From the IMG/VR virus record IMGVR_UViG_3300044591_002232, positions 124,001-188,000 of that record: DNA of 64,000 nt. One strand, given 5' to 3'. A program made the translations under genes and the position numbers. Positions 10,509 through 60,770 of this stretch are shown piece after piece. The notes under the pieces were generated by a model. The model was given only the letters and a program-made list of their open reading frames with translations, did no database searches and had not been told where the DNA came from. Position 1 is the first letter of the stretch. Each line of letters starts with the position of its first letter.

Positions 10509-11075
10509 ATGGCTGCATTCAAAATAGTACAAGAAGTGAATTCACTTATTTTACCCCTGAGCGGTGTACAAACTAGTAATCCCATTTCTCTAAAAAGTGG
10601 ATATTTAAGAATCAGGGCCGAATCTGATTGTTATCTTGAAGTTGGATATACACCAGTCGGTATTAATACAATATCTAGTCTTTGGATTGATAGGGCCGAA
10701 ACCTTAGTCCTTAAAGAAAACATAGCATCACAAAGAGTGGTAGGTGTTATTACTGGAACTAATACACTAATCGACTTTCCACAAGGAACTGGTTCTCCAG
10801 TAGAGGTCAATGATTATGTGAGCCTTTCTGGGATTCAACCAGTTGGAATTAATACTAATTATGCAAGAGTATCAAATATTTATACATCATCCGGTGTTGG
10901 TGGATATTATTCTACTCGTATTGCATTGGACTGGAATACATCTTCTGTCACTGGAGTCATAACGGCTACTGATTCTGCAGAAATTAGGAAAGCCGTTAAG
11001 GTATCGGCTCTTGATGGTGGTTTTGGCCCCAACAAAGTTCATATTACAGAAATTCAAATCGCATCAGAGGCATAA
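10509..11075 (+). CDS. Conserved cyanomyovirus hypothetical upstream of gp21
   Basis: ORF after late promoter 10480; abuts gp21. Confidence 0.65.
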   Translation: MAAFKIVQEVNSLILPLSGVQTSNPISLKSGYLRIRAESDCYLEVGYTPVGINTISSLWIDRAETLVLKENIASQRVVGVITGTNTLIDFPQGTGSPVEVNDYVSLSGIQPVGINTNYARVSNIYTSSGVGGYYSTRIALDWNTSSVTGVITATDSAEIRKAVKVSALDGGFGPNKVHITEIQIASEA

Positions 11076-11077
11076 AA

Positions 11078-11728
11078 ATGAAACTAATCATCGAAGAAGC
11101 AGAATCAGTAAAATACATTACCGAAGAAATTAACGGTAAAAAGGCTCTTTGTATTGAAGGAAATTTTCTTATGGCCAATGAGCCAAATAGAAATAATCGA
11201 GTATATCCAATGAAAATTCTTAGAGATGCAGTGAATACCTATACTAAGAATTTTATTGAATCAAAAAGATCTCTAGGTGAACTTAATCATAATTCCATTC
11301 CAGGAGTAGATCTAACAAAAGTATCTCATATGATTACCTCTCTTAAAGAGAATGGTAATTATTTTTATGGTAAGGCCCGAATTCTAAACACCCCAATGGG
11401 TAAAATTGCTCAGGGTCTGATTGATGAGGGGGTAGTTCTTGGAGTTAGTTCACGGGCTCTGGGTAGTGTTAAACAAACTAACGAAGGATATTCCGTAGTT
11501 GGTCCGGATCTTGTTATTAATTGTGTGGACATTGTTCATGATCCTTCTGTTGGTGCCGCCGCATTTGTCAATGGCATTTATGAAGGAAAAGAATGGATTT
11601 ATGACTCCGCAAAGCAAGAATATGTCGCAATGAATATTAAAAACAAGATTGAACGTGACGTAGTAAGCAAAAGATTGAGTGAAGAGCGTATGATTATGCA
11701 TTTTGAGAACTACTTGAACATGCTCTGA
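11078..11728 (+). CDS. gp21: Prohead core protease
   Basis: NRNNRVYP, SLGELNH, VSHMITSL, GVSSRALGS, DIVHDPS. Confidence 0.93.
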   Translation: MKLIIEEAESVKYITEEINGKKALCIEGNFLMANEPNRNNRVYPMKILRDAVNTYTKNFIESKRSLGELNHNSIPGVDLTKVSHMITSLKENGNYFYGKARILNTPMGKIAQGLIDEGVVLGVSSRALGSVKQTNEGYSVVGPDLVINCVDIVHDPSVGAAAFVNGIYEGKEWIYDSAKQEYVAMNIKNKIERDVVSKRLSEERMIMHFENYLNML

Positions 11729-11805
11729 TGCTAAATAACTCTATTAAAGTGTCAACTTTTCTAAATAATAATAGATTAAATACAACTGTTAAGGAGACTT
11801 TTTAA

Positions 11806-12972
11806 ATGGCTCGCAAGCAACAACTAGATGAAATGGAAGCAAAGAATCCCCAGTCTAAGACTGCGGTGAATGCAAATGCCAAGCCAGGCGATCCAATGCC
11901 CAAACTCACCACTGGTATTCCTGATGGTCAAACAGGCAGCTGGGAAGATCTTGGTGGCCCAACTCCAGAAAATGCCAAGCCTGATGACGACAGCGCAAAA
12001 CTCAAGGATCCCGCTTCAAACATTAAGCGAGTTGCCGAGATTATTCGCGGTCGTAAAGGTTCACAAGAAGGTGATGTGGCAATGTCAAAAATGTCTCTTC
12101 CTGAAGAGGATGATCATGACGAAGAGGATCTCGTAACTGAGGAATCATGCGAAGATGATGAAGAAAAAGATGAAGATGAAGAAAAGCATGATAAGAAAAA
12201 GAAAAAAGAAGATGACGAAGATGAAGATGAAATGAAAGAAGACTTCGACATTGATAAAGATGTCGAGGCTCTTGTAGGTGGCGAAGATCTTTCCGAAGAA
12301 TTCAAAGAAAAGGCCAAGACCATCTTTGAGGCCGCACTTCGTTCTAAAGTCTCCGAGATCAAAGAATCTCTAGAAGAGAGCTATACCCAGGCTCTTCAAG
12401 AAGAAGTTCAGGCTATTGCCGAAGAACTACAGGAACGTGCTGATTCCTACCTAGAATATGTTGCAGACGAGTGGATGCATGAGAATCAGCTAGTAATCAC
12501 TCGCGGAATCAAGGAAGAACTCACCGAGTCATTCCTTGTCAATCTCAAGAATCTTTTTGAGCAACATTATGTGTCCATGCCTGATGAGAAATATGATGTT
12601 CTTGAGAACATGGTGACTAAACTAGATGAAATGGAAGATAAACTCAACGAGCAAATTGAGAAAAATATTCAACTTAGCAAGCGTCTCTGTGAGGCTGTTG
12701 CTGATGGAATCTTTGATGATGTTGCTGAGGGTCTAGCCGAAACTCAGAAAGAAAAGCTCGCTTCACTTGCCGAAAGTGTTGAGTTTGAAGGTGAAGATCT
12801 TTATCGTGAAAAACTAGAGACTCTACGGGAATCTTATTTCCCCGCGAATTATGTCTCTCCAATCGCTCACTCTGAAGTACTAACCGAAGATACCGAATTT
12901 GTTGCACCTGAGTCTTACTCAAATTCAATGGATCGTTATCTCAGAATGGCTTCAATGATAGCTAAAAATTGA
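11806..12972 (+). CDS. gp22: Prohead core scaffold protein
   Basis: Acidic coiled coil; EEFKEKAKTIFEAA, YLEYVADEWM; lies between gp21 and gp23. Confidence 0.92.
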   Translation: MARKQQLDEMEAKNPQSKTAVNANAKPGDPMPKLTTGIPDGQTGSWEDLGGPTPENAKPDDDSAKLKDPASNIKRVAEIIRGRKGSQEGDVAMSKMSLPEEDDHDEEDLVTEESCEDDEEKDEDEEKHDKKKKKEDDEDEDEMKEDFDIDKDVEALVGGEDLSEEFKEKAKTIFEAALRSKVSEIKESLEESYTQALQEEVQAIAEELQERADSYLEYVADEWMHENQLVITRGIKEELTESFLVNLKNLFEQHYVSMPDEKYDVLENMVTKLDEMEDKLNEQIEKNIQLSKRLCEAVADGIFDDVAEGLAETQKEKLASLAESVEFEGEDLYREKLETLRESYFPANYVSPIAHSEVLTEDTEFVAPESYSNSMDRYLRMASMIAKN

Positions 12973-42063: not shown

Positions 42064-43065
42064 TTGGATTTTATTGATGAAACCTTTATTGAACGTGTTG
42101 CACCTAGACTACAAAACTTCAAGAAAGTAAAACCTAAACTTTATAATTTTCGATGTCCCTATTGTGGCGACTCTTCTAGATCTAAAAAAAAGGCCAGAGG
42201 ATATCTCTATCCGGTAGATAATAACACGAATTATAAGTGCCATAACTGCGGAATCAGTATTTCTCTTAATAACTTTTTAAAAGAAATAGACCCACCTCTT
42301 TATAAAGAGTTTACAATTGAAAAATATAAGGCTGGCTTTACTGGAAAGAATTTTGTTGTTGAGGCTCCTAAATTTGAAATATCAAAACCAAATTTTAGAG
42401 AAAGAGTTGGGCTTCCGGCTGCATCTAAAAATGATGTTGCAAGACAATATCTCTTAAAAAGAAAAATTGATCCGGATAAGTTTTATTATACCGAAAACTT
42501 CAAACAATGGATCAATGAAATTACTTATGAGCCAAATCTTTTAGAAGAGCCTAGAATAGTAATACCTTTGTACTATAATAAGAAATTAATAGGAGTACAA
42601 GGCCGAGCCCTTAATTCTTCTTCGGTAAAATACATCACAATCATGTTTGATGAACATTCTCCGAAGATTTATAATTATGATAATGTTAATAAAAAAGAAT
42701 TTGTTTATGTCCTAGAAGGACCTTTTGATTCTTACTTTATTAAAAATTCGGTCGCCATGTGCGGGGCCGATTTAGATCTAAAAAGTCTAAATATCTATTA
42801 CCCGGTATATGTTTATGACAACGAACCTCGCAACCAAGAAATACATTCTAGAATGTCAAAGGTAATCAAAGAGGGTTATTCAATAGTCATATGGCCAGAT
42901 ACAATAAAACAAAAAGACGTTAATGATGCAGTTCTTGCGGGAATTGATGTTGAGGACGTTTTGTCCAAAAATATTTACAAAGACCTAGAAGCACAACTTA
43001 AATTCAACTATTGGAAGAAAAATGAGCGAAGAAATCAAAGTCAAAAAACGCAATGGCACTATTGA
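42064..43065 (+). CDS. gp61: DNA primase
   Basis: FRCPYCGDS..KCHNCG zinc finger, VLEGPFDS, YDNEPRN, KDVND. Confidence 0.93.
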   Translation: MDFIDETFIERVAPRLQNFKKVKPKLYNFRCPYCGDSSRSKKKARGYLYPVDNNTNYKCHNCGISISLNNFLKEIDPPLYKEFTIEKYKAGFTGKNFVVEAPKFEISKPNFRERVGLPAASKNDVARQYLLKRKIDPDKFYYTENFKQWINEITYEPNLLEEPRIVIPLYYNKKLIGVQGRALNSSSVKYITIMFDEHSPKIYNYDNVNKKEFVYVLEGPFDSYFIKNSVAMCGADLDLKSLNIYYPVYVYDNEPRNQEIHSRMSKVIKEGYSIVIWPDTIKQKDVNDAVLAGIDVEDVLSKNIYKDLEAQLKFNYWKKNERRNQSQKTQWHY

Positions 43066-44074
43066 GCCATTGCAACTTTCTAAACTCCATGAAATGGTCG
43101 CCTGCGCCTGTGAGGGCCTTTCTGGAGTTTCAGTATCTCAGGTAGAAATGGCATCTGGGATTCAATTTTATGATGGTATTTCAACCAATGAAATTCAAGA
43201 AATCTTGATCAAGGCCGCATCTGATCTTATTTCTCTAGATAATCCTAATTATCAATACGTGGCCGCAAGACTTCTTCTGTTTTCAATTCGGAAGAAGATC
43301 TATGGTGGTCGAATTGATCTACCTCATCTGAGTGAGCACATTAAAAAGTGTGTAGACCTTGGTGTTTATGATGCCTCCATTTATGAGAACTATTCTGAAG
43401 AAGAACTAGATCTGGTCAATTCTTTTATTGACCATGACCGGGATCTTTTGTTTACTTATGCTGGCCTTCGGCAGGTAGTTGATAAGTATCTTGTGCAAGA
43501 CCGAGTGGATAATGTTCTTTATGAGACTCCTCAGTTTATGTACTTGGTGATTGCACTTACTGGTTTTGCAAAGTATCCTAAAGACAAAAGGATGTCTTAT
43601 GTAAAGCGTTATTATGATGCAATTAGCAAGCATAAAATTAATATTCCTACACCAATTCTTGCAGGAGTCAGAACCAAACTGAGGCAATATAGTAGTTGTG
43701 TTCTTGTTGATGTAGGAGATAGTCTTTCTAGTATCGAGGCTAGTGACGCTGCGGTTTTTAGATATGTTGCACAGCGAGCCGGTCTAGGTATTAATGCTGG
43801 GCGTATTAGGGGGATAAACAGTAAAATTCGTGGCGGTGAAGTTGTCCACACTGGAGTTATTCCTTATCTGAAAAAGTTTGAGGCCACTGTAAAAAGTTGT
43901 ACGCAAAATGGAATTCGCGGGGGTTGTTTTGATTCTGATTCTGAAGTTTTATTAATTGATAGTGTAGAAATTGATGGTAAAATTTATACACTCGATGATG
44001 AAATTGATGGGGTTAAAGTGTCTGAAATTATAAATAGTCATAACGGAAATAAAACCGTTATGTTATTGGAGTAA
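43022..44074 (+). CDS. nrdA: NrdA fragment 1 (301-aa extein with ATP cone plus 49-aa split-intein N-half)
   Basis: VKKRNG ATP cone, PTPILAG, SSCVL, TQNGIRGG then CFDSDSEV. Confidence 0.93.
   Translation: MSEEIKVKKRNGTIEPLQLSKLHEMVACACEGLSGVSVSQVEMASGIQFYDGISTNEIQEILIKAASDLISLDNPNYQYVAARLLLFSIRKKIYGGRIDLPHLSEHIKKCVDLGVYDASIYENYSEEELDLVNSFIDHDRDLLFTYAGLRQVVDKYLVQDRVDNVLYETPQFMYLVIALTGFAKYPKDKRMSYVKRYYDAISKHKINIPTPILAGVRTKLRQYSSCVLVDVGDSLSSIEASDAAVFRYVAQRAGLGINAGRIRGINSKIRGGEVVHTGVIPYLKKFEATVKSCTQNGIRGGCFDSDSEVLLIDSVEIDGKIYTLDDEIDGVKVSEIINSHNGNKTVMLLE
43925..44071 (+). mobile_element. Split intein 1, N-half (49 aa, atypically short)
   Basis: Begins with Cys (CFDSDSEVLL) exactly where NrdA homology stops. 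Confidence 0.75.
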
Positions 44075-44077
44075 AAA

Positions 44078-45073
44078 ATGGAAGACTTAATTTGGAACGA
44101 AGAAACGATTAGAAAAAGTAGATCTCCTTTTAGTATCTACTTTTATCTTAAAAAAACCAATGGAAATCAAGAGGAAGCTCAGAAACTTTACAGGGAATTT
44201 TTGGATAAAAATGTACCATTTAAAGAAAAACATAATAGACCCAATGCAAAAGAGTATTGGATGACCCGAGGATTTAGCGAAGAAGAAGCCATAATAAAGG
44301 TTAGGGAATTTCAATCTAAGCCTTTAGATTTGGAAATTTATATTGAGAAGTACGGAGAGGAGGAGGGTCTAGCTAAGTTTAATAAAAGAAAAGAAAATCT
44401 TCAAAATAGATTTGATGTTGAGATTAAAAATGTTCAACAAAAATTAAATTGCAGTTATGATGAGGCATATGAATATTGTTGCCAAAGAAGGAGAAGTTGT
44501 TCTCCTAGAACAGTAGATTATTGGTTAAATAGGGGCCATTCATTGGAGGATGCAAAAAAATTAGTATCAAAATTTTCAAAAGAAAGTAGTCCAAGAAGCA
44601 TATATTATTGGATCAGAATTGGTTATACCGAAGAAGAAGCAAAATTAAAAGTTTCTGAATATCAAGATAACAATTCTATAAGTGCCATAATGAAACGATA
44701 TGGGTGCGATAAATTTGAGGCTCTTGATATACAAGAATCTATACTTGAAAAAACCAAAAAAACTAATATTCAAAATAAAAAGAGTGTCGAAATTGGTGAT
44801 GAATATGCTTTTTTCGTTTATAAAAAGGAGGTTCAACGCGAAACAAAAAAAACTCTAAGATTGTATAAAGATACTTTTGTCAAAACTGATAAAAGTCAAA
44901 CTCTAGATCATATGTATAGCGTTTTTTGGGGTTTTTATAATGATGTTCCTCCAAAAATAATTGGATCTATTTATAATCTTAGATATGTTTCTCAATCAGA
45001 AAACTCAAAAAAACAATCTAATTGCTCAATAACACTCGAAACCTTATTAGAAAAGTACGAAAATGGAAATTAA
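44078..45073 (+). CDS. Free-standing HNH-like homing endonuclease inside fractured nrdA
   Basis: YW..RG.S.EEA repeats; LDHMYS..GF.N.VPP.IIGS..NL...N..K...CSIT. Confidence 0.7.
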   Translation: MEDLIWNEETIRKSRSPFSIYFYLKKTNGNQEEAQKLYREFLDKNVPFKEKHNRPNAKEYWMTRGFSEEEAIIKVREFQSKPLDLEIYIEKYGEEEGLAKFNKRKENLQNRFDVEIKNVQQKLNCSYDEAYEYCCQRRRSCSPRTVDYWLNRGHSLEDAKKLVSKFSKESSPRSIYYWIRIGYTEEEAKLKVSEYQDNNSISAIMKRYGCDKFEALDIQESILEKTKKTNIQNKKSVEIGDEYAFFVYKKEVQRETKKTLRLYKDTFVKTDKSQTLDHMYSVFWGFYNDVPPKIIGSIYNLRYVSQSENSKKQSNCSITLETLLEKYENGN

Positions 45074-45464
45074 AATTAATCTGGCAAAGAAAAGAATTTC
45101 AGATGTCTCCGTTGGAGATAGAGTCTATTGTTATAACGAATTTGATGATAAATTTTGTGTTGGAAATGTAACAAATTTATTTACTCCAACAATAAAAAAA
45201 GAATATCAGGAAGAAATTCTTATTGGTGGGGAGGCTGTTTATACTTCTAGTATTCATCCTTTTTATGATGGTCTTAATAAGAAATGGGTGGACTCACGGG
45301 AAATCGACAACATTTTTGGATTAGGGGTTTATGGTGATTATATTGACATTTTAAATGATCATAATTATAAATCTAATTGTGATAAAACTTTTTATGATTT
45401 TACTGTTGATAAATATCACAACTATTTTGTCGGCAAAAATGGAAAATTTACTTTAACTCATAAT
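45063..45464 (+). mobile_element. Split intein 1, C-half (134 aa)
   Basis: ISDVSVGDRV, block B TSSIHPF, block F YDFTVDKYHNYF, block G THN followed by Ser. Confidence 0.8.
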
Positions 45465-47219
45465 TCATCCACAGTATTTTTTCCTGTGTGGCACCAAGAA
45501 ATCGAGGATATTATTGTATTAAAAAATAATAAAGGCTCAGAAGATAATCGTGTTCGCAACCTTGATTATGCCATTCAGCTGAGTAAAATTTTTTATGAGC
45601 GATTTATTCAGGATGGAGAAATTACTCTGTTTTCACCTCATAATGTTCCAGGTCTTTATGAAAAATTTGGTTTAGATGGATTTGATGAACTTTATGTAAA
45701 GTATGAAAATGATCCTTCTATTCCAAAGAAAAAAGTAAAGGCCCAAGAGCTTATTATTGATATCTTGAAAGAGCGTGCAGAGACTGGTCGGATTTATCTT
45801 ATGAATATCGATCATTGTAATTCACATGGTCCTTTTAAGGATCAGATTACAATGAGTAACCTTTGTGTTGCTGGTGATACTAAAATTGAAATTGAAATTT
45901 TTGTTAAAGATATTAATGATTACAGGTGGGCAACAATTGACATAAAAAATTTAAATGATTTTATTAACAATCCAGAGTATGGGAATCTGAGAGTTCTTTC
46001 TTACGACCTTAATACTAGAACGAATGTAACCCAATCTATTACTGCATTTGCCGAAACTTTACCAAAAGCCCAGGTAATGAAACTTAGGCTCAGTAATAAT
46101 GTCGAAATCGTTGTTACCCCAGATCATAAGGTTTATACCAAAAATCGAAGCTATGTTATGGCCAAGGATCTGACTGCTTATGATGAATTAGTTTCACCAA
46201 AATTGAATGAATCTCTAAAAGTTGTTTCAACCGAATATCTTGAGGAAGAAATTCCTGTTTATGATATTACTGTAGAAGGAACTCATAATTTCTTTGCAAA
46301 TGGAGTTCTTGTTTCCAATTGTATGGAAATCCTTCTAAAAACTACCCCGATTGAACATATTGATGATGTAGATGGATCTATTGCTCTTTGTATTCTTTCT
46401 TGTGTTAATGTAGGTACAATTAAGTCTGATAAAGAGCTTGAAGAATGTTGTGATCTTTCTGTTAGATTCTTAGATGAGCTAATTGACCATCAGGAATATC
46501 CTGTTAAGGCCGCCGAATTAACAACCAAGGCTAGTCGTTCTCTAGGTATTGGTTATATTGGTCTGGCTCATTATCTTGCTAAATTGGGATTTAAATATTC
46601 TGATCCTGGTGCATGGGGAGCTGTCCATAAACTAACTGAAAGTTTTCAGTATTATCTTCTAAAATCATCCAATAATCTAGCAAAAGAAAAGGGTGCATGT
46701 GACAACTTTAAACACACTAAGTATTCTGATGGAATTCTTCCAATTGATACTTATAAGAAAGAAGTTGATGAAATTTGTGATGTAGAATATACTCATGACT
46801 GGGAACAACTTCGTCAGGATATTTTAGAACATGGTCTTCGCCATACTACACTCTCCTCTCAACCCCCAACGGAGAGTTGCCTTTTTTGGGAACATAAGAT
46901 TAAAACTTCTACCGGGGAAATGGACTTCCATCAAATTGCCGAATATGGTGGACTTGATTGGAGAGGGATTGAGGAAAATGATGCAATCGGCTGGTATGAC
47001 CTGAACAAGACTATTACAGTTGAAACTCAAGATGGATACAAAGAAGTTGATAAACTTTATTTCAATGGAAATAAAGAAGTTGCGACTATTACCTTTGAAA
47101 ATGGTAAAGTGATTAAGTGTACACCCAATCATAAGTTTTTGGTTCGACTAGAAAATGGTTCCACTATCTGGAAGCGAGTTTATGAATTGAATGAAGATGA
47201 CGAAGTAGTTGAGATTTAA
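45063..47219 (+). CDS. nrdA: NrdA fragment 2 (IntC1 - extein - cis intein - extein - IntN2)
   Basis: LTHN|SSTVFFPVWHQEIEDI; ERAETGRIY; SNL|C...SN|CMEIL; RSLGIGYIGLA; QPPTES|CLF. Confidence 0.93.
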   Translation: MEIKINLAKKRISDVSVGDRVYCYNEFDDKFCVGNVTNLFTPTIKKEYQEEILIGGEAVYTSSIHPFYDGLNKKWVDSREIDNIFGLGVYGDYIDILNDHNYKSNCDKTFYDFTVDKYHNYFVGKNGKFTLTHNSSTVFFPVWHQEIEDIIVLKNNKGSEDNRVRNLDYAIQLSKIFYERFIQDGEITLFSPHNVPGLYEKFGLDGFDELYVKYENDPSIPKKKVKAQELIIDILKERAETGRIYLMNIDHCNSHGPFKDQITMSNLCVAGDTKIEIEIFVKDINDYRWATIDIKNLNDFINNPEYGNLRVLSYDLNTRTNVTQSITAFAETLPKAQVMKLRLSNNVEIVVTPDHKVYTKNRSYVMAKDLTAYDELVSPKLNESLKVVSTEYLEEEIPVYDITVEGTHNFFANGVLVSNCMEILLKTTPIEHIDDVDGSIALCILSCVNVGTIKSDKELEECCDLSVRFLDELIDHQEYPVKAAELTTKASRSLGIGYIGLAHYLAKLGFKYSDPGAWGAVHKLTESFQYYLLKSSNNLAKEKGACDNFKHTKYSDGILPIDTYKKEVDEICDVEYTHDWEQLRQDILEHGLRHTTLSSQPPTESCLFWEHKIKTSTGEMDFHQIAEYGGLDWRGIEENDAIGWYDLNKTITVETQDGYKEVDKLYFNGNKEVATITFENGKVIKCTPNHKFLVRLENGSTIWKRVYELNEDDEVVEI
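45864..46319 (+). mobile_element. Cis mini-intein (152 aa) at the NrdA active-site SNL|CxE
   Basis: CVAGDT, VTPDHKVY, YDITVEGTHNFFANGVLVSN followed by Cys. Confidence 0.9.
46878..47216 (+). mobile_element. Split intein 2, N-half (113 aa)
   Basis: CLFWEHKI, CTPNHKF, ELNEDDEV then stop. Confidence 0.88.
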
Positions 47220-47270
47220 TGCGTTGATGCCTTCACTTTACTAAATAATAATAGTTTAGTAAAGGCATCA

Positions 47271-48347
47271 ATGAAGACAAAACTAGTTACTTTAATGAAA
47301 ACCAGATTTAACATTTTAACCCCGCACGAACTCTTAACAGAATTGAAACAAATCGGAAAAATTGACTATAGGTCATTAAGAAAGCCATTTGAAGAAACCC
47401 CGCCAGAGAGATTTGATCTTGAGGTTATTAAAAAATATGTTAGTTATGTTTTTCTATACCCAAATAAAAGAAAACTTCAATATGAACCAGAATATTGGAT
47501 GTACAGAAGGAACCTTTCTTATAATGAAGCTGTTGAGCTTATTAAACAAAATAAAATAGATAATGGTCAAACAAAAGAGGCTTTTATAAAAAGATATGGA
47601 GAAGAAAAAGGATTAGAAATGTATGAAAAATTTAGATTAACCAGCGCATATCCGTCTTCCGATGAATGGTTCAAAGAAAAATATGGGGAAACATGGGAAG
47701 AAGAAAAAGCATATGCTATGAAAAGAAAATCTAAACGAACTGTAGAATATTGGACCCATCGTGGATATAGTTTAGAAGAAGCTAAAATTGAAGTTAGTAA
47801 ATATCAAAGATCAACCTCTGGTGTTCATAGAGAATATTATAGACAAAGAGGATATAGTGAAGATGAAATTGCTGTTATTTTTAATGAAATAGATAAGAAA
47901 AAACCCAATCATAAAAGAAACACCAATTATCTCCGTGAAAAATACCCCGATACTTGGCAAGAGATTTATCTTGAAGTATCTGAAAAATATAGAAAAAGAA
48001 TGGAGGAGTTAGGAGTATGGATTGAAAATGACATTGCTGACGACTTTAAAAAATATAAAACGCTTGTAATTAGATATACTAATCAGAGTTTATTATTTTA
48101 TGGAGAATTGATTGAGAATTTAGAATTGAGATCTAAAGACTTTCAATTAGATCACAAATATTCAATTAAAATGGGATTTATAAATAATATTCCAGCTGAA
48201 ATAATTGGATCAATAGTAAATTTAGAGATACTTCCAGCGAGTATTAATGGCTCAAAACAACATAAATGTTCTATTACTAAAACCCACCTTTTAACCGAGT
48301 ACAAAAAATTTAAGGAGACACATGAAAGTAAAAACGATTCAATTTGA
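47271..48347 (+). CDS. Second free-standing HNH-like homing endonuclease inside nrdA
   Basis: YW..RGYSLEEA repeats; LDHKYS..GF.NNIPAEIIGS..NL...N.SK..KCSIT; late promoter 47241. Confidence 0.72.
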   Translation: MKTKLVTLMKTRFNILTPHELLTELKQIGKIDYRSLRKPFEETPPERFDLEVIKKYVSYVFLYPNKRKLQYEPEYWMYRRNLSYNEAVELIKQNKIDNGQTKEAFIKRYGEEKGLEMYEKFRLTSAYPSSDEWFKEKYGETWEEEKAYAMKRKSKRTVEYWTHRGYSLEEAKIEVSKYQRSTSGVHREYYRQRGYSEDEIAVIFNEIDKKKPNHKRNTNYLREKYPDTWQEIYLEVSEKYRKRMEELGVWIENDIADDFKKYKTLVIRYTNQSLLFYGELIENLELRSKDFQLDHKYSIKMGFINNIPAEIIGSIVNLEILPASINGSKQHKCSITKTHLLTEYKKFKETHESKNDSI

Positions 48348-48426
48348 AGGAGAAATTCTTCCAACTTACGACATTGAAGTTCCAGAAGTTCATCATTACA
48401 ACTGTGAAGGGCTAGTATCTCACAAC
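48322..48426 (+). mobile_element. Split intein 2, C-half (35 aa)
   Basis: Blocks F and G ending SHN with +1 Ser. Confidence 0.88.
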
Positions 48427-48861
48427 AGTTCGGTTTCGTGTAATGCAACAAACGGAGTAGAACCTCCTAGAGATTATCTTTCCATTAAACAATCTAAAAA
48501 GGGAACTCTCAAACAAATTGTACCCCAGTATAATAAACTAAAGAACAATTATACACTTCTTTGGGACATGCCTTCAAATGAAGGATATATTAATTGTGTT
48601 TCTGTTATGCAAAAGTTCTTTGACCAGGGAATTAGTGTAAATGGTAGCTATAATCCCCAGAATTATCCAAATAATGAAGTGCCAATCAGTGTTATAGTCA
48701 ATGACGTTCTTTCACTATACAAATATGGTGCAAAGACTGCATATTATCATAACACATATGATGGCAAAACTGATGATGTTTCTGCCGAAGAAATTAAAAA
48801 TAATGATTTAATTTCCGAAATCTTATCATCAGAAGAAGAATGTATCGCATGTAACGTTTAA
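48322..48861 (+). CDS. nrdA: NrdA fragment 3 (35-aa IntC2 plus 144-aa C-terminal extein)
   Basis: YDIEVPEVHHYNCEGLVSHN|SSVSCNATNGVEPPR, DQGIS, KTAYY, C-terminal CIAC redox pair. Confidence 0.92.
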   Translation: MKVKTIQFEGEILPTYDIEVPEVHHYNCEGLVSHNSSVSCNATNGVEPPRDYLSIKQSKKGTLKQIVPQYNKLKNNYTLLWDMPSNEGYINCVSVMQKFFDQGISVNGSYNPQNYPNNEVPISVIVNDVLSLYKYGAKTAYYHNTYDGKTDDVSAEEIKNNDLISEILSSEEECIACNV

Positions 48862-48873
48862 TCTAGGAAATTT

Positions 48874-50022
48874 ATGTCTAAAGTAAAAGGAATGACAGTT
48901 TTTAATACAGAAGAAATTAACACTAAAAAGCAAAAAATGTTTTTTAGTGCTCCATTGGGGATCCAACGATATGATGAGTATAAATACCCAATTTTTGAAA
49001 AACTCACACAACAGCAGCTCAGTTTCTTTTGGCGTCCAGAAGAAATAAATCTTCAAAAAGATAGGGCAGATTATCAGACTCTTCGCTCAGAGCAAAAACA
49101 CATTTATACTTCTAATTTAAAGTATCAGATTATGCTTGATTCTGTTCAGGGTCGAGGAACTTCAATTGCTTTTCTGCCATATTGTTCTTTACCAGAACTT
49201 GAATCATGTATAGAAGCCTGGGGATTCATGGAAATGATCCATAGTCGATCATATACTTATATTATAAAAAATATCTATGCTAACCCATCTGAAATATTTG
49301 ATACTATTATTGGTGATGAGAGAATTTTAGAAAGAGCCAAGAGTATTACTGATAATTACGATGAATATATTCAACATGCTCAACAATACTCTTCTTCAAA
49401 TCTTTGGCAATTTAATAATGAGGGTGTAGATTTAGGTAAAAATGAGCTTTATGAGGTAAAGAGAAAACTTTATCGAGCCATAATGGCAGTGAATATCCTA
49501 GAAGGAATTCGCTTTTATGTTTCCTTTGCTTGTTCTTTTGCCTTTGGTGAGCTGAAGTTAATGGAAGGAAGTGCGAAGATTATTTCGCTAATTAGCCGCG
49601 ATGAAGCGTGTCATTTAAATATAACCCAGAATATTCTTTCAAAATGGAAATCAGGCGACGATCCTGATATGATTAAAATTGCAAAAGAAGAAGAGCAATG
49701 GGTTTATAAGACATTTGAAGAAGCAGTTAATCAAGAAAAAAGATGGGCCGAATATATTTTTAAAGACGGCTCACTTATAGGGTTAAACTCCGCTCTTCTT
49801 TGTCAATATGTTGAGTGGGTTTGTAATAGACGTATGAAGGCTATTGGTTTTAAACCTCTTTATGATATTCCGGCCAATAATAATCCTCTTCCATGGACGG
49901 ATAACTGGCTCAGTTCAAAGGGGGTGCAGGTTGCACCTCAAGAGGTCCAGATTACTTCTTATCTAGTAGGGGGTCTTAATCAGGACATTAAACCAGATAG
50001 TTTCGCCAACTTCAAACTTTGA
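48874..50022 (+). CDS. nrdB: Ribonucleotide reductase class Ia beta subunit
   Basis: FFWRPEEI, DSVQGRG, EMIHSRSY, LEGIRFYVSF, RDEACH. Confidence 0.96.
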   Translation: MSKVKGMTVFNTEEINTKKQKMFFSAPLGIQRYDEYKYPIFEKLTQQQLSFFWRPEEINLQKDRADYQTLRSEQKHIYTSNLKYQIMLDSVQGRGTSIAFLPYCSLPELESCIEAWGFMEMIHSRSYTYIIKNIYANPSEIFDTIIGDERILERAKSITDNYDEYIQHAQQYSSSNLWQFNNEGVDLGKNELYEVKRKLYRAIMAVNILEGIRFYVSFACSFAFGELKLMEGSAKIISLISRDEACHLNITQNILSKWKSGDDPDMIKIAKEEEQWVYKTFEEAVNQEKRWAEYIFKDGSLIGLNSALLCQYVEWVCNRRMKAIGFKPLYDIPANNNPLPWTDNWLSSKGVQVAPQEVQITSYLVGGLNQDIKPDSFANFKL

Positions 50023-56495: not shown

Positions 56496-57542
56496 ATGAA
56501 AAAATACGACGCAATTGTTTTTATTGGAAGATTTCAGCCTTTTCATAATGCTCATCTAGAAATTGTAAAAAGAGCATATGAACTGACTGATAATCTCATT
56601 ATGATTATTGGTTCTCAGTATAAACCAGTAACCTACAAAAATCCATTTCAAATTTCTCTTGAGCACCTGAATACTCATAGTTACTGGTCTGCCTTGAGGC
56701 AATCCATTTTAGAAGTGACTTCAGAAGAAGCTCCACTAGAAATTGAAATTCAAGAAGATATTTATGGTGATACCAAGTGGTGTAATGAAGTTCAAGAAAA
56801 GGTAAAATATTGTCTTGAGACTATTTCACCATCTGCTAATGTTGGTATCATCGGTTGTGAAAAAGACGAGACTTCTTATTACCTGAAGATGTTTCCACAA
56901 TGGGAACTAATTGAGGTTCCTCTTGAGCAAAATCTAAGTGCAACTCAGATCAGGGAACTCTACTTTGTAGAAGAACCGAATATGGACTTTGTGAAAAGTG
57001 TTGTTCCAGAACAAATCTTCAACTATCTTGATAGTATGAAGAGTTCTGAATGGCATAATCATATCGTAAATGAGCGTAGATTTGTCGAGAAATATAAGTC
57101 TCAGTATGCTTCCTTGCCCTGGCCACCAATTTTTGTTACAGTAGATTCTGTAGTGTTTCAATCTGGTCATGTCTTGATGGTCCGTAGAAATGCCTATCCT
57201 GGAAAGGGCCTGATTGCCTTGCCAGGCGGTTTTCTAGACGCAAACACCGATTCCTCCCTAGAAGATGCTATGATTCGAGAACTCCGAGAGGAAACCGGAC
57301 TTAAGGTTCCTTCTCCGGTTCTTCGTGGATGTATTAAAAATACTCATGTATTTGATGATATTTATAGAAGCAGCCGAGGGCGAACAATTACTCATGCCTT
57401 TAATATTGTTCTTCCTGATGGAGAACTTCCAAGAGTAAAAGGTGGTTCTGATGCTGATAAGGCATTCTGGATTCCTTTCTCTGAACTTGACCCAAGAGAG
57501 TGCTTTGAAGACCATTATCAAATTATTCGATATTTTATATGA
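56496..57542 (+). CDS. nadM: Bifunctional NMN adenylyltransferase / ADP-ribose pyrophosphatase (NadM-Nudix)
   Basis: IGRFQPFHNAH, KNPF, LSATQIR, ALPGGF..DAMIRELREETGL Nudix box. Confidence 0.93.
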   Translation: MKKYDAIVFIGRFQPFHNAHLEIVKRAYELTDNLIMIIGSQYKPVTYKNPFQISLEHLNTHSYWSALRQSILEVTSEEAPLEIEIQEDIYGDTKWCNEVQEKVKYCLETISPSANVGIIGCEKDETSYYLKMFPQWELIEVPLEQNLSATQIRELYFVEEPNMDFVKSVVPEQIFNYLDSMKSSEWHNHIVNERRFVEKYKSQYASLPWPPIFVTVDSVVFQSGHVLMVRRNAYPGKGLIALPGGFLDANTDSSLEDAMIRELREETGLKVPSPVLRGCIKNTHVFDDIYRSSRGRTITHAFNIVLPDGELPRVKGGSDADKAFWIPFSELDPRECFEDHYQIIRYFI

Positions 57543-58030
57543 AAACTATCAAAGGAGATCTAATTAAACTTGCCGAAAAAGGTAATTTTGATATTATTAT
57601 TCAAGGTTGTAACTGCTATAATGTTATGGGTGGGGGGTTGGCAAAACAACTTGCAGACCGATATCCCAAAGTAAAACAAGCGGATATGTGTACAACTAGG
57701 GGGGATAAATTAAAGTTGGGTAGGTTTACTACGGCTCAAATAAACACAGGAAAAACAATTTTTACTGTGATAAATGCCTACACTCAGTATGAAATGAGTA
57801 ATACTAAAGATGTATTTGAATATGGTGCCTTTGAAAAATTCTTAGAGTTATTTTCTAAATGTGTCCCTGATTATACACGGGGACCACATAGAAAAGTAAG
57901 CATTGGATTCCCTCAAATTGGCGCTGGACTTGCTGGTGGTGATTGGAGTAGAATTTCCAAAATGATTGAAAAGTTTTCAGAAGACGTTTCTGATTATGCT
58001 GATGTCACAGTAGTAGAATATCAACCTTGA
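57539..58030 (+). CDS. Macrodomain (Appr-1-p processing) protein
   Basis: IKGDLI, GCNC..MGGGLA, NAYTQ, FPQIGAGLAGGDW. Confidence 0.85.
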   Translation: MKTIKGDLIKLAEKGNFDIIIQGCNCYNVMGGGLAKQLADRYPKVKQADMCTTRGDKLKLGRFTTAQINTGKTIFTVINAYTQYEMSNTKDVFEYGAFEKFLELFSKCVPDYTRGPHRKVSIGFPQIGAGLAGGDWSRISKMIEKFSEDVSDYADVTVVEYQP

Positions 58031-58421: not shown

Positions 58422-58955
58422 ATGGACCTAAACAAAAATTTACTGCTCAATTCGGATTCTTACAAGTATTCGCAGTTTAATCAATATCCCCCACAGACGG
58501 AAGGTGTATTTTCTTACATTGAAAGTCGTGGTGGTCATCACGATGAAACTCTCTTCTTTGGTCTTCAGATGTTTCTAAAAGACTATCTGATGAAGCCAAT
58601 TAGAATGGAAGATATTGATATTGCCGAGGCAATTATTCAGGCTCACGGTGAACCATTCTACCGTGGTGGTTGGGAATACATCGTCAAAAAGCACGGTGGA
58701 CATCTCCCCGTAAGAATCAAGGCTGTCCCTGAAGGAATGGTAATTCCTGTCAAGAATGTTTTGCTTACAATTGAAAATACCGACCCAAATTGCTACTGGT
58801 TGACTAGTTTCTTAGAGACTGCTCTACTTCGCTCGATTTGGTATCCGACGACAGTTGCGAGTAATTCTTATAATTCTAAGAAACTTATTCTCAATTATCT
58901 TATCCGCAATGGAGACCCAAATCTTATTGATTTTAAACTTCATGATTTTGGTGCT
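58422..58955 (+). CDS. nadV: Nicotinamide phosphoribosyltransferase exon 1
   Basis: NSDSYKYSQ, YIESRGG, LETALLRSIWYPTTVAS, ends LHDFGA. Confidence 0.93.
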
Positions 58956-59873
58956 TAACTCGGGCACCTAACTTTGTGAATTGCTGGAACCCCTAAGTTG
59001 TTTATACAATATGGAAATCAGCAGCCAAGACTACTATTAGTAGTAAGGTTCAGAGGCCATCGAAAGGGTTATTATTAATAACACTAAGTAGAGTACACTC
59101 AAGCGAGTGGAAGCGCAAAGACAGTAAAAAATACTGTAAGATATGGTCCAATCTTTATCGAAAGATAAAGCAGTTCGTATTCAACATAAATACTTCTAGA
59201 CCAAAATCATAAAATATTTATGTTAAAATTATTAGAAACCGTACCTAGTTTAGAAACATTTAGAGGCTATTCAATTTCTGATGATGGAAGAATTTTTTCT
59301 CATAAGACTAATAAATTTTTAAAACCATCCATAAGAATGGGAAATGGGTGTGCTTATGAAAGAATTGGTTTGACAGATTCAAATAGAGTCCGTAAAACAT
59401 TTTCAATTCATAGACTCGTTTGCATAGCTTTTAAATACAATCCCAATCATTTAAATTTAACTGTAAATCATATAGATGAAAATACTTTTAATAATCGTAT
59501 TGAAAATCTAGAATGGTTAACAATTGGAGAAAATATTAGATACTCTAAAGCAAATAAAACTTATGTTGGGGATCCTGATAAACTTACAACAGAGTTTAAT
59601 GAGGGTGACTACACAGTAAAAGAATTTGCCGAAAAGTATAATACTCCTTTAAATACTATGTGGGATATTTTAAATAAACTAAGTTCAACACAAAACAACA
59701 GAAAAAGAAGAGTATTTAATAAAGAGCTACGACTAGAAATTGCTTTAATGAGAAAATCAGGAAAGTCATTGAAAGAAGTTGCCAAATACTTTAATTGTTC
59801 TGAATCTATGGTTTCTAAGGTGTTTGATGAATACGAACGGGGTGTGTTTAGCGACCACACTTGAATAACTCCG
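58956..59873 (+). mobile_element. Group I intron (IA2-like) carrying an HNH ORF
   Basis: P1 ggtgct/gggcacc with U-G at splice site; P aattgctggaa, Q aatcagcag, R gttcagaggcca, S aagatatggtcc; P3 ctttgtg/cgcaaag; terminal G at 59873; P10 ctcg/cgag. Confidence 0.9.
59220..59864 (+). CDS. Intron-encoded HNH (NUMOD4-HNH type) homing endonuclease
   Basis: YSISDDGRIFS, IHRLVCIAF, VNHIDENTFNNRIENLEWLT. Confidence 0.88.
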   Translation: MLKLLETVPSLETFRGYSISDDGRIFSHKTNKFLKPSIRMGNGCAYERIGLTDSNRVRKTFSIHRLVCIAFKYNPNHLNLTVNHIDENTFNNRIENLEWLTIGENIRYSKANKTYVGDPDKLTTEFNEGDYTVKEFAEKYNTPLNTMWDILNKLSSTQNNRKRRVFNKELRLEIALMRKSGKSLKEVAKYFNCSESMVSKVFDEYERGVFSDHT

Positions 59874-60770
59874 CGAGGAGTATCTTCTTTAGAATCCGCA
59901 GGAATTGGTGGACTAGCTCACCTAGTCAACTTTAAAGGAACTGATACTGTTGCGGCACTTCTTTATGGTAAAGAATTTTATCACGAAGATATTGCCGGAT
60001 TTAGTATCCCAGCATCCGAACATAGTGTTGCGTGCTCGTATAATGCAATTCCAACTGTAGAAATAATTGATGAAAAAAATGAATTATCTTACATTCGTAG
60101 AATGTTAGAATTTTTATACACCCATCAAATGGTATCTATTGTTGGTGATGCATACGACATTTATAATTTTATAAATTTAATGGGTAGTATAAAAGATGAA
60201 ATTATTGAAAAAACAAAAGATAACAAATTTGTAATTCTTCGCCCAGACAGTGGAAACCCAGTGGAGGTTGTTTTAAAGTGCGCCCAACTTTTGGATAATC
60301 ACTTTGGAAGTACTATGAACTCTAAGGGTTATAAGGTTCTAAATCACGTCAGACTCATTCAAGGGGACGGTGTGAATTATGAAACTATTGACCGGGTTCT
60401 TCACGTTCTAGAAGCAAATGGATACAGTTCGGATAACATTGCCTTCGGTCAAGGTGGCGGATTGCTTCAACACGTAAATCGTGATGATTTTAAATTCGCA
60501 ATGAAGTGCAGTTCGGTAAATGTAAACGGAACCTGGCGTGACGTTTATAAAGACCCTGTAACCGACCCAGGCAAAACATCTAAAAAAGGTAGACTTCAGC
60601 TCATCAAAAATGAACAAGGAGAATATCAGACTGTTCCAGAAAGACCCTGGAATAAAGACGAGTTAGTAACTATTTATGAGAATGGTCAACTTTTGGTTGA
60701 TTATACTCTTGAGCATGTAAGAATTAATGCAAGCCAATGCTTGCACAATTTCTTCGCTAAAGCAGAGTGA
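59874..60770 (+). CDS. nadV: Nicotinamide phosphoribosyltransferase exon 2
   Basis: Starts RGVSS; SIPASEHS, VGDAYD, RPDSG, IQGDG, AFGQGGGLLQ, KTSKKG; in frame with track ORF 60102. Confidence 0.92.
   Translation, partial: RGVSSLESAGIGGLAHLVNFKGTDTVAALLYGKEFYHEDIAGFSIPASEHSVACSYNAIPTVEIIDEKNELSYIRRMLEFLYTHQMVSIVGDAYDIYNFINLMGSIKDEIIEKTKDNKFVILRPDSGNPVEVVLKCAQLLDNHFGSTMNSKGYKVLNHVRLIQGDGVNYETIDRVLHVLEANGYSSDNIAFGQGGGLLQHVNRDDFKFAMKCSSVNVNGTWRDVYKDPVTDPGKTSKKGRLQLIKNEQGEYQTVPERPWNKDELVTIYENGQLLVDYTLEHVRINASQCLHNFFAKAE

What the first reader, a model, noticed from the sequence alone, without database searches (positions are those of the whole stretch)
58422..60770. Group I intron with HNH endonuclease inside a phage NAMPT (nadV) gene
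Seen: exon 1 ends HDFGA at 58955 and exon 2 resumes RGVSS at 59874, giving a 476-aa NAMPT. The P1 U-G splice site, P3, P/Q/R/S, a variant P7 (GGCCA/UGGUC), P10 and the terminal G are all present. The HNH ORF lies after the core with its own ATAAATA late promoter. Established: phage group I introns mostly sit in DNA/nucleotide metabolism genes or psbA. I do not know of one in NAD salvage, so this may be a new insertion site that makes NAD rescue splicing-dependent.
Basis: partly seen in the sequence, partly recalled or inferred. Interest (0 to 1): 0.8.

Follow-up and report, generated by a model that had tools for sequence, protein, structure and literature searches.

The report
Mobile group I intron in cyanophage nadV
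A T4-like cyanophage carries a self-splicing-type group I intron, with its own HNH homing endonuclease, inside its NAD-salvage gene nadV: an ordinary kind of selfish element in a host gene where I found no earlier report of one.

Summary

- **Layout.** nadV exon 1 is 58422-58955 and is followed at once by an in-frame TAA. The intron is 918 nt (58956-59873). Exon 2 is 59874-60770.
- **Junction.** It is exact to the codon against uninterrupted NAMPTs, including PDB 7yqo. A 476-aa intron-less allele exists in a metagenome.
- **Covariance model.** The core scores 75.9 bits on Rfam RF00028 (cut-off 50), but only when a short stretch is scanned.
- **Other copies.** The same intron sits at the same site in five further sequence variants, ten assemblies in all.
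- **Structure.** Over the six variants, 83 modelled pairs show 13 compensatory changes, and 1% of cells are unpaired.
- **Endonuclease.** An I-HmuI-like HNH ORF lies in the loop of a covarying long-range helix (P9.1). It is preceded by a conserved NATAAATA late-promoter-like motif.
- **Mobility.** The intron differs at 3 of 918 nt between two lineages whose exons differ at a third of synonymous sites. Exon differences from the intron-less allele cluster within about 25 nt of the junction.

I rate it a new member of a known kind, of moderate interest. Related phages instead carry an intein, or a gene-splitting endonuclease, in nadV.

The parts
58422..58955 (+). nadV exon 1 (178 codons, NAMPT N-terminal domain; ends ...KLHDFGA)
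   Evidence: ORF list; Pfam NAMPT_N E 2e-26; aligns to PDB 7yqo residues 19-193
58956..59873 (+). Group I intron, 918 nt, 31% G+C
   Evidence: Rfam RF00028 75.9 bits; homologous copies at the same site in L002, L014, L015, L062, L152; composition
58950..58968 (+). P1: exon GGUGCU paired with guide GGCACC, U58955.G58963 at the 5' splice site. The loop holds CUCG (58959-62), which pairs with exon 2 CGAG (59874-77) as P10
   Evidence: Read from sequence; pairs kept in all 6 variants apart from one C.A in L062
58956..58958 (+). In-frame TAA at intron nucleotides 1-3; stops ribosomes at the splice site
   Evidence: ORF 58422-58958
58972..59170 (+). Ribozyme core. P3 58972-78/59114-20. P4 58982-87/59018-23. 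P5 with 11-nt GAAA receptor CCUAAG/UAUGG 58992-97/59010-14. P5a. P6/P6a. P7 59053,59055-59/59144-49 with bulged A59054. P7.1 59068-82. P7.2 59096-109. P8 59121-37. P9 59153-70 with GAAA loop. No P2
   Evidence: Hand model tested on 6 variants; RNAalifold independently predicts P1, P3, P4, P5/P5a, P6a, P7.1, P7.2, P8, P9
59173..59180 (+). P9.1, 5' strand (GUUCGUAU); pairs with 59831-59838 and closes the loop holding the endonuclease gene
   Evidence: 3 of 8 pairs change on both sides in L014, L015, L152
59185..59192 (+). CATAAATA, a late-promoter-like motif (cyanomyovirus NATAAATA), 27 nt before the HNH start. It is also the 5' arm of a weak 10-bp hairpin (59183-92/59215-24) that covers the ATG
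   Evidence: Motif kept in all 6 variants, TATAAATA in L062; consensus from PMC2984593; hairpin -5.8 kcal/mol, z -1.26
59220..59864 (+). HNH homing endonuclease gene, 214 aa (NUMOD4 + HNH_3 + C-terminal HTH), I-HmuI-like
   Evidence: Pfam; PHROG 59 E 5e-37; PDB 1u3e I-HmuI E 1.5e-9; pN/pS about 0.2-0.27 between variants
59831..59838 (+). P9.1, 3' strand (AUACGAAC), inside the endonuclease coding sequence
59841..59861 (+). P9.2 hairpin (6 bp) overlapping the last codons of the endonuclease gene
   Evidence: One compensatory and two one-sided changes, none broken
59873..59873 (+). Terminal G of the intron (3' splice site)
   Evidence: Sequence; exon 2 begins at the codon equivalent to 7yqo R194
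59874..60770 (+). nadV exon 2 (298 codons + stop; NAPRTase barrel). No in-frame start before ATG 60102
   Evidence: Pfam; PDB alignment; ORF list
60018..60262 (+). A+T-rich variant segment of exon 2 (29% G+C against about 40%). It runs from just after the EHS motif to the RPD motif and has a 9-residue loop insertion. It is a lineage variant, not decay
   Evidence: full-length relatives with the same variant, P0001, P0005, P0016
56496..57542 (+). NMN adenylyltransferase-Nudix gene, the pathway partner of nadV (NARP2-type pair)
   Evidence: Pfam CTP_transf_like + NUDIX; PHROG 395/3462; pathway from bioRxiv 10.1101/2024.02.11.579819
57539..58030 (+). Macro-domain protein between the two NAD genes
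   Evidence: Pfam Macro, E 5.8e-4, below the curated cut-off; PHROG 335 E 6e-48

Best explanation
This is a mobile group I intron of the phage IA type, with P7.1 and P7.2 and no P2. It interrupts nadV of a T4-like cyanomyovirus between the codons equivalent to human NAMPT Y195 and R196, inside the nicotinamide/PRPP-binding motif HDFGxRGVSS.

Shown by sequence and comparison:
- the fold;
- the exact junction;
- presence/absence polymorphism among close relatives;
- an intron far younger than the gene it sits in.

Inferred mechanism:
1. The pre-mRNA folds, and ribosomes reading exon 1 stop at the UAA at intron positions 1-3.
2. The guide sequence GGCACC pairs with the exon end GGUGCU (P1). A free guanosine bound in P7 attacks after U58955.
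3. CUCG in the P1 loop aligns exon 2 (P10). G59873 enters the G site and the exons are joined as GGUGCU|CGAGGA, giving a 476-aa NAMPT.
4. The 214-aa I-HmuI-like HNH enzyme, encoded in the loop of P9.1, is probably made late from the internal NATAAATA motif, on transcripts that lack the ribozyme 5' half.
5. The enzyme nicks intron-less nadV in co-infecting relatives. Repair then copies in the intron together with roughly 20-85 nt of flanking exon.

Because exon 2 has no start of its own, the phage's NAMPT, and with it the Nampt + Nmnat NAD-rebuilding pair, depends on splicing.
For: - Covariance model: RF00028 scores 75.9 bits against a cut-off of 50. The homologous introns score 61-81 bits.
- Structure: of 83 modelled pairs, 13 have compensatory changes, 7 have one-sided changes, and 5 of 479 cells are non-pairs across 6 variants. 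RNAalifold recovers the same helices, with 10 compensatory pairs. The canonical GAAA loop and its 11-nt receptor are invariant.
- Junction: exon 1 residue 178 abuts exon 2 residue 1 in uninterrupted genes and in PDB 7yqo at 193|194. The intron-less 476-aa allele P0001/L156 is 95.2% identical in nucleotides.
- Mobility: the window and L002 introns are 915/918 identical, with HNH pS 0.00, while the exons have pS 0.33-0.38. Against the intron-less allele, 8 differences fall in 58937-58954 and 7 in 59876-59897, compared with a background of about 1 per 30 nt.
- Close relative: contig L008 is 100% identical over the parts of nadV compared outside 58722-60292, and nearly so in the flanks. It has no intron.
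- Function kept: in the pair L014/L015, where intron and exons diverged together, the exons have pN/pS 0.13-0.20 and the HNH gene 0.27.
- Endonuclease: HNH_3 and NUMOD4 are above the curated cut-offs. I-HmuI (1u3e) matches at E 1.5e-9, with the catalytic His and the Asn residues aligned.
- Promoter motif: conserved in all variants and fits the published cyanomyovirus late consensus.
Against: - There are no RNA data.
- The window and L002-type copies have G.U instead of A-U next to the guanosine-binding pair of P7. This could weaken splicing.
- There is no P2, unlike the T4 and Twort introns (that comparison is from memory).
- The start-codon hairpin is no more stable than shuffled sequence (z -1.26) and has two mismatches in L062.
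- TATAAATA is only modestly enriched in the window: 12 against 5.4 expected.
- Whole-window Rfam scans do not report the intron.
Confidence: 0.88

Rival explanations
1. It is a dead intron. The insertion no longer splices and nadV is a pseudogene in this phage.
For: - A G.U replaces A-U beside the G-binding pair in P7.
- nadV is an accessory gene, so its loss may be tolerated (inference).
- There is no RNA evidence.
Against: - Both exons are intact, with no frameshift or stop.
- All core helices are kept through compensatory changes.
- The exons are under purifying selection in the L014/L015 pair, which has carried the intron throughout its divergence.
- The window-type and L002-type copies, which share the G.U, occur in six independent assemblies.
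Confidence: 0.06
2. It is a gene in pieces. A free-standing endonuclease gene split nadV, and the two halves are translated separately and assemble, as in the related contigs L153-L155.
For: Such a split nadV exists in relatives: 251-aa and 227-aa ORFs lie around a 378-aa endonuclease ORF, with no intron found there. Split genes of this kind are described for cyanophage-like loci (PMC2677866).
Against: - Here 264 nt of conserved, covarying ribozyme precede the ORF.
- Exon 2 has no in-frame start before 60102. A separate product would therefore lack the residues equivalent to human R196, D219 and H247.
- The splice-site pairings P1 and P10 are conserved.
Confidence: 0.03
3. It is an assembly artefact or chimera that joined unrelated DNA inside nadV.
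For: The window comes from a metagenome-assembled viral contig.
Against: The same insertion at the same nucleotide is present in ten independent assemblies as six sequence variants.
Confidence: 0.01

Closest known systems
Phage T4 td, nrdB and nrdD (sunY) group I introns with I-TevI/II/III
   Same: All are phage group IA-type ribozymes with P7.1/P7.2. Each has an in-frame stop just inside the intron and an endonuclease ORF looped out of a peripheral helix (for sunY, near the 3' end). The ORF is expressed late from a T4-type late promoter, with a hairpin over the start. The T4 details are from my own knowledge.
   Different: The host gene here is nadV, not thymidylate synthase or ribonucleotide reductase. 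The endonuclease is HNH rather than GIY-YIG. There is no P2. The host phage is a cyanomyovirus.
I-HmuI / SPO1 DNA polymerase intron (also I-BasI, I-TwoI, and I-PfoP3I of cyanopodovirus Pf-WMP3)
   Same: These are intron-encoded HNH enzymes of the same family. PDB 1u3e matches at E 1.5e-9 with the catalytic His/Asn aligned. I-PfoP3I is a nicking HNH in a group IA2 intron of a cyanophage (PMC3428280).
   Different: Protein identity is only about 30%. The target gene is different. Nicking activity was not tested here.
Introns in Felixounavirus DNA polymerase, Listeria A511-like nrdE and Campylobacter CP21-like phages
   Same: These are the closest nucleotide matches to the ribozyme core in GenBank phages, at 70-77% over 120-180 nt.
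   Different: They have different host genes, and only part of the core aligns. None lies in nadV.
S-PM2 psbA intron with free-standing F-CphI (cyanomyovirus)
   Same: A group I intron in a T4-like cyanophage auxiliary gene, linked to a homing endonuclease.
   Different: In S-PM2 the endonuclease is outside the intron and belongs to another family. The host gene is psbA.
Aeh1 mobE and the 'fractured genes' of cyanophage-like metagenomic loci
   Same: An endonuclease 5' leader hairpin contains the TATAAATA late-promoter element (PMC2677866). The window's nrdA and the split nadV of L153-L155 look like this kind.
   Different: Those are free-standing endonuclease genes, with or without split inteins, not introns.

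Membership tests
Group I intron (Rfam RF00028) | Score at or above the family's curated gathering score | tested here: met
   75.9 bits against 50 for window 58931-59170; 61-81 bits for four homologues. Found only when short stretches are scanned.
Group I intron (Rfam RF00028) | P1 with a U.G pair at the 5' splice site, and a terminal G at the 3' splice site | tested here: met
   U58955.G58963 and G59873. Both agree with the protein-defined junction.
Group I intron (Rfam RF00028) | Conserved core P3-P9 including the P3/P7 pseudoknot, supported by covariation | tested here: met
   13 compensatory pairs of 83, with 1% non-pair cells; RNAalifold agrees. P3 has one compensatory pair. P7 has only a one-sided change.
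Group I intron (Rfam RF00028) | Guanosine-dependent self-splicing | not testable with these tools
Subgroup IA2 (phage type) | Extra helices P7.1 and P7.2 between P7 and P3' | tested here: met
   59068-82 and 59096-109 are predicted by hand and by RNAalifold. The pairs are mostly invariant, so support comes from conservation.
Subgroup IA2 (phage type) | Assignment by a subgroup-specific model; P2 present as in the T4 and Twort introns | tested here: inconclusive
   No subgroup models were on hand. P1 is followed by UAA and then P3, so there is no P2.
HNH homing endonuclease, I-HmuI-like | HNH_3 and NUMOD4 domains above the curated cut-offs; catalytic His and Asn residues | tested here: met
   HNH_3 26.3 bits against 24.8; NUMOD4 29.7 against 23.4. 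H84, N92 and N96 align with the I-HmuI motif.
HNH homing endonuclease, I-HmuI-like | Site-specific nicking near the intron insertion site | not testable with these tools
   Biochemical assay needed.
Mobile (homing) intron | Presence/absence polymorphism at one site, an intron younger than its host gene, and co-converted flanks | tested here: met
Nicotinamide phosphoribosyltransferase (NAMPT/NadV) | NAMPT_N + NAPRTase domains, with active-site motifs kept across the two exons | tested here: met
   Pfam; PDB matches at E 1e-58 and 6e-81. HDFG, RGVSS, GTD, EHS and RPDSG are present. Human residue numbers are from memory.
NARP2 (Nampt + Nmnat NAD reconstitution pathway) | A KVP40-type Nampt together with an Nmnat in the same phage | tested here: met
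   An NMNAT-Nudix gene lies at 56496-57542. KVP40 nadV is 45% identical to exon 2. The definition comes from the paper read. Counter-defence activity was not tested.

The most novel reading that the evidence does not exclude
nadV of this cyanophage group is a contested locus. Three kinds of selfish element each target a conserved or exposed point of the enzyme:
- the HNH intron at HDFGx|RGVSS;
- a LAGLIDADG intein at RPD|SG;
- a gene-splitting endonuclease in the loop after EHS.

The endonucleases may act as weapons between co-infecting near-identical phages. On this reading, the clustered and partly non-synonymous changes at the junction in intron-less alleles (KMQDFGF against KLHDFGA) are target-site escape. 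A further reading is that guanosine-dependent splicing ties rebuilding of NAD to the nucleotide state of a cell under NAD-depleting defence.
Probability: 0.12. Interest if true: 0.65.

Novelty: new member of a known kind. Interest (0 to 1): 0.42.

Why it matters
The find adds an NAD-salvage, counter-defence gene to the list of phage genes invaded by group I introns. That list is dominated by DNA polymerase, ribonucleotide reductase, thymidylate synthase, terminase and psbA.

The insertion follows the known rule that homing elements sit at codons for catalytic residues.

More useful than the insertion itself is the natural series around it. Contigs that are nearly identical outside nadV carry the intron, an intein, or neither. 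Co-conversion tracts are visible, and alleles have diverged at the target. This offers a system for studying how introns, inteins and free-standing endonucleases compete for one gene in wild cyanophages. It also allows a test of whether such elements carry a cost for an anti-defence pathway.

There is also a practical point. Gene callers report this nadV as two or three separate ORFs, so surveys of phage NAD pathways will undercount it. Whole-contig Rfam scans also miss the intron.

Tried and rejected
1. Whole-window Rfam scans at gathering and at E-value thresholds found only a tRNA. The intron appears only in a 1.1-kb scan.
2. Megablast of the locus against GenBank phages found nothing.
4. 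I first suspected that the diverged A+T-rich segment 60018-60262 was decay. That is rejected: full-length NAMPTs with the same variant exist at 64-99% identity.
5. I drew the start-codon hairpin one base out of register and corrected it. Its energy is not better than shuffles, so it is offered only as a possibility.
6. The single hit in bacterial genomes (L158, Gemmataceae MAG) is a chance match with no nadV and no intron context.
7. A profile-based scan of IMG/VR for nadV returned only the 80 best, mostly uninterrupted loci, so it gave no usable frequency of interruption.
8. One script mis-parsed L014; it was redone with fixed coordinates.
9. The Rfam dfrA-dnaX sub-threshold hit at 59155-59229 could not be followed up, because no paper in the library mentions the motif.
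10. I built no covariance model of my own. Rfam scores and direct pair counts were sufficient.
Full report
**What is there**

The window comes from IMG/VR contig 3300044591_002232, 249,820 bp. It encodes T4-type proteins: tail sheath, portal, major head protein, gp43-type polymerase, gp41-type helicase and ribonucleotide reductase. Its major head protein is 88% identical to that of Synechococcus phages B3 and B23 of the Kyanoviridae. B23 has the same gene order, NMNAT - two small genes - NAMPT - tRNAs, with an uninterrupted nadV. The element therefore sits in a T4-like cyanomyovirus.

**The observation**

- Exon 1 is 58422-58955 and ends KLHDFGA. TAA follows at 58956-58958.
- Exon 2 is 59874-60770 and begins RGVSS. 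Its first possible in-frame start is ATG 60102.
- Pfam assigns NAMPT_N to exon 1 and NAPRTase to exon 2.
- In the best uninterrupted phage genes, the two tblastn matches abut without gap or overlap. In RsoM2USA they are 11638-12141 and 10783-11637.
- The bacterial NAMPT structure 7yqo reads HDFGA at 189-193 and RGVSS from 194. Exon 1 aligns to residue 193 and exon 2 from 194.
- A metagenomic protein of exactly 476 aa (P0001, locus L156) is the intron-less form of this allele, 95.2% identical in nucleotides over both exons.

**The ribozyme**

A 1.1-kb Rfam scan gives RF00028 at 75.9 bits (gathering score 50), E 3e-19, for 58931-59170. Two scans of the whole 64 kb missed it. This is a filter effect, and it is worth knowing for future scans.

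My model of the fold, read from the sequence, is:

| Element | Window coordinates | Note |
|---|---|---|
| P1 | 58950-55 / 58963-68 | U.G at the splice site |
| P10 | 59874-77 / 58959-62 | |
| P2 | none | |
| P3 | 58972-78 / 59114-20 | |
| P4 | 58982-87 / 59018-23 | |
| P5 | CCUAAG / UAUGG | canonical 11-nt GAAA-tetraloop receptor |
| P5a, P6, P6a | | |
| P7 | 59053, 59055-59 / 59144-49 | A59054 bulged |
| P7.1, P7.2 | | |
| P8 | | |
| P9 | | GAAA loop |
| P9.1 | 59173-80 / 59831-38 | 8 bp, long-range |
| P9.2 | 59841-61 | |
| Terminal G | 59873 | |

**Relatives and covariation**

The same intron, with its endonuclease gene, lies at the same nadV position in other contigs:

- IMG/VR contigs L002/L016, L012 (identical to the window), L014 and L015;
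- JGI metagenome contigs L045, L057, L071, L058 and L062;
- ENA contig L152.

Together these are ten assemblies and six sequence variants. Four of the divergent copies score 61-81 bits on RF00028.

Over the six variants, my 83 modelled pairs split as follows:

- 13 pairs change on both sides and stay paired (P3, P5a, P6a x2, P8 x3, P9 x2, P9.1 x3, P9.2);
- 7 pairs have one-sided, wobble-compatible changes;
- 5 of 479 cells are non-standard.

RNAalifold, run blind on the core, returns P1, P3, P4, P5/P5a, P6a, P7.1, P7.2, P8 and P9, with 10 compensatory pairs. It cannot draw P7 because of the pseudoknot.

The 'variant P7' is real. The window and L002 types have G.U where the other four variants have A-U, next to the presumed guanosine-binding G-C pair.

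**The endonuclease gene**

The ORF 59220-59864 has NUMOD4, HNH_3 and a C-terminal helix-turn-helix. It matches PHROG 59. Its best solved relative is I-HmuI, the nicking enzyme of the SPO1 polymerase intron, at E 1.5e-9 with the catalytic His and Asn residues aligned.

The ORF lies in the loop closed by P9.1. Its last eleven codons overlap the 3' strand of P9.1 and the P9.2 hairpin, yet those helices still covary. Between variants the gene has pN/pS of 0.2-0.27, so it is kept as a protein.

CATAAATA at 59185-92 lies 27 nt before the ATG and is conserved in every variant. The most distant one, L062, has TATAAATA. This fits the NATAAATA late promoter reported for cyanomyoviruses (PMC2984593).

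The motif can pair with the start-codon region in a 10-bp A-U hairpin. That arrangement has been described for endonuclease genes in Aeh1 and in cyanophage-like 'fractured gene' loci (PMC2677866). Here the hairpin is no more stable than shuffled sequence and is imperfect in L062. I therefore treat promoter use as plausible and the hairpin as only possible.

**Mobility**

- The window and L002 introns differ at 3 of 918 positions, with no synonymous change in the endonuclease gene. Their exons differ at a third of synonymous sites: pS 0.33 and 0.38.
- Contig L008 is 100% identical to the window over the parts of nadV compared outside 58722-60292, and nearly so in the flanks. It has no intron.
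- Against the intron-less allele L156, differences pile up next to the insertion site: 8 in 58937-58954 and 7 in 59876-59897. There the window agrees with the other intron-bearing alleles.

This is the expected footprint of homing with co-conversion of the flanks. The same bases also form P1 and P10, so part of the pattern may reflect splicing constraints.

In L014/L015 the intron and exons have diverged to a similar degree. The exons there are under purifying selection (pN/pS 0.13-0.20). This is the best indirect evidence that the intron splices in vivo.

**Context and meaning**

nadV lies two genes downstream of an NMNAT-Nudix gene, with a macro-domain gene between them. A KVP40-type Nampt plus Nmnat is the NARP2 pathway, shown to rebuild NAD+ and defeat Thoeris and DSR2 (bioRxiv 10.1101/2024.02.11.579819).

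The insertion point is equivalent to human NAMPT Y195|R196, by the PDB alignment, inside the substrate-binding motif. The human residue numbering is from my own knowledge. This agrees with the general rule that homing sites encode critical residues (PMC3984707).

**Novelty**

I found no paper linking an intron or intein with nadV/NAMPT. No GenBank phage has this intron or a close relative of its endonuclease.

The nearest ribozyme cores are in Felixounavirus polymerase genes, Listeria phage nrdE and Campylobacter CP21-like phages, at 70-77% over part of the core. The only hit in bacterial genomes is spurious.

The kind of element is thoroughly known, and only the host gene appears to be new. 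I rate it a new member of a known kind, with interest 0.42. The surrounding natural variation is what raises it above routine.

**Limits**

Splicing, nicking, target specificity and promoter use are all inferred. The frequency of interrupted nadV genes could not be measured, because the tools list only the best matches.

Noticed in passing
L006, L007, L008: 5098-6033 (site equivalent to window about 60250, motif RPD|SG): Close relatives carry a 312-aa in-frame insert in nadV. L008 is 100% identical to the window over the parts of nadV compared outside 58722-60292. The insert starts with Cys, has TPNH and LAGLIDADG-like motifs, and ends GN followed by Ser. It is an intein with a homing endonuclease at the active-site motif equivalent to human R311-D313. 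The Pfam Intein_splicing match is only E 3.8e-4, below the cut-off.
   Followed up: partly
L153, L154, L155: 2076-4684: In another lineage nadV is two ORFs of 251 and 227 aa, separated by a 378-aa ORF that matches PHROG 314 'homing endonuclease' (E 7e-28). No group I intron was found there. It appears to be a gene in pieces. About a dozen 226-239-aa C-terminal pieces in the protein database suggest the arrangement is common.
   Followed up: partly
window 43022-50022: [quoted passage not shown]
- ORF 43022-44074 holds the ATP-cone, the N domain and the first 79 barrel positions.
- ORF 44078-45073 has no Pfam match and follows a TATAAATA at 44029.
- ORF 45063-47219 starts with a HINT domain, carries barrel positions 79-392, and ends in an intein N-part.
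- The following ORFs were not examined.
The layout resembles the split-intein 'fractured genes' of PMC2677866.
   Followed up: partly
window 60018-60262: The middle of exon 2 is a 29% G+C segment with a 9-residue insertion. It is at most 36% identical to the same part of about 100 other nadV loci, yet 64-99% identical to a sub-lineage of full-length NAMPTs (P0001, P0005, P0016). The window's nadV is therefore a mosaic. The segment ends at the intein site, and the gene-splitting endonuclease of L153 sits in its inserted loop.
   Followed up: partly
L003, L004, L006-L008, L156 at the position of window 58935-58955: Intron-less alleles of the closest relatives read KMQDFGF where the intron-bearing ones and most NAMPTs read KLHDFGx. 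A conserved His is thus replaced by Gln next to the insertion site. This may be escape from the endonuclease. It was not tested.
   Followed up: no
window 59155-59229: There is a sub-threshold match to the Rfam dfrA-dnaX RNA (RF02952): 39.9 bits, gathering score 48.6, E 0.0088. It covers the 3' half of P9 and the hairpin over the endonuclease start. That family may be the leader of intron-borne or free-standing endonuclease genes. No paper on it was found.
   Followed up: partly
window, whole: Rfam scans of the full 64 kb miss a group I intron that scores 26 bits above the curated cut-off when 1.1 kb is scanned. Other introns in this window could therefore have been missed too.
   Followed up: no
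window 59220-59877: The endonuclease ORF and exon 2 are in the same reading frame, separated only by TGA and 9 nt. This is probably coincidence.
   Followed up: no
L152: 825-1894 and L153: 1485-1997: Related contigs carry a NADAR-domain gene (L152 also has a faint macro-domain hit) between the NMNAT-Nudix gene and nadV. The window has only a macro-domain gene and a 102-aa ORF there. The ADP-ribose-processing partner of the pair therefore varies.
   Followed up: no
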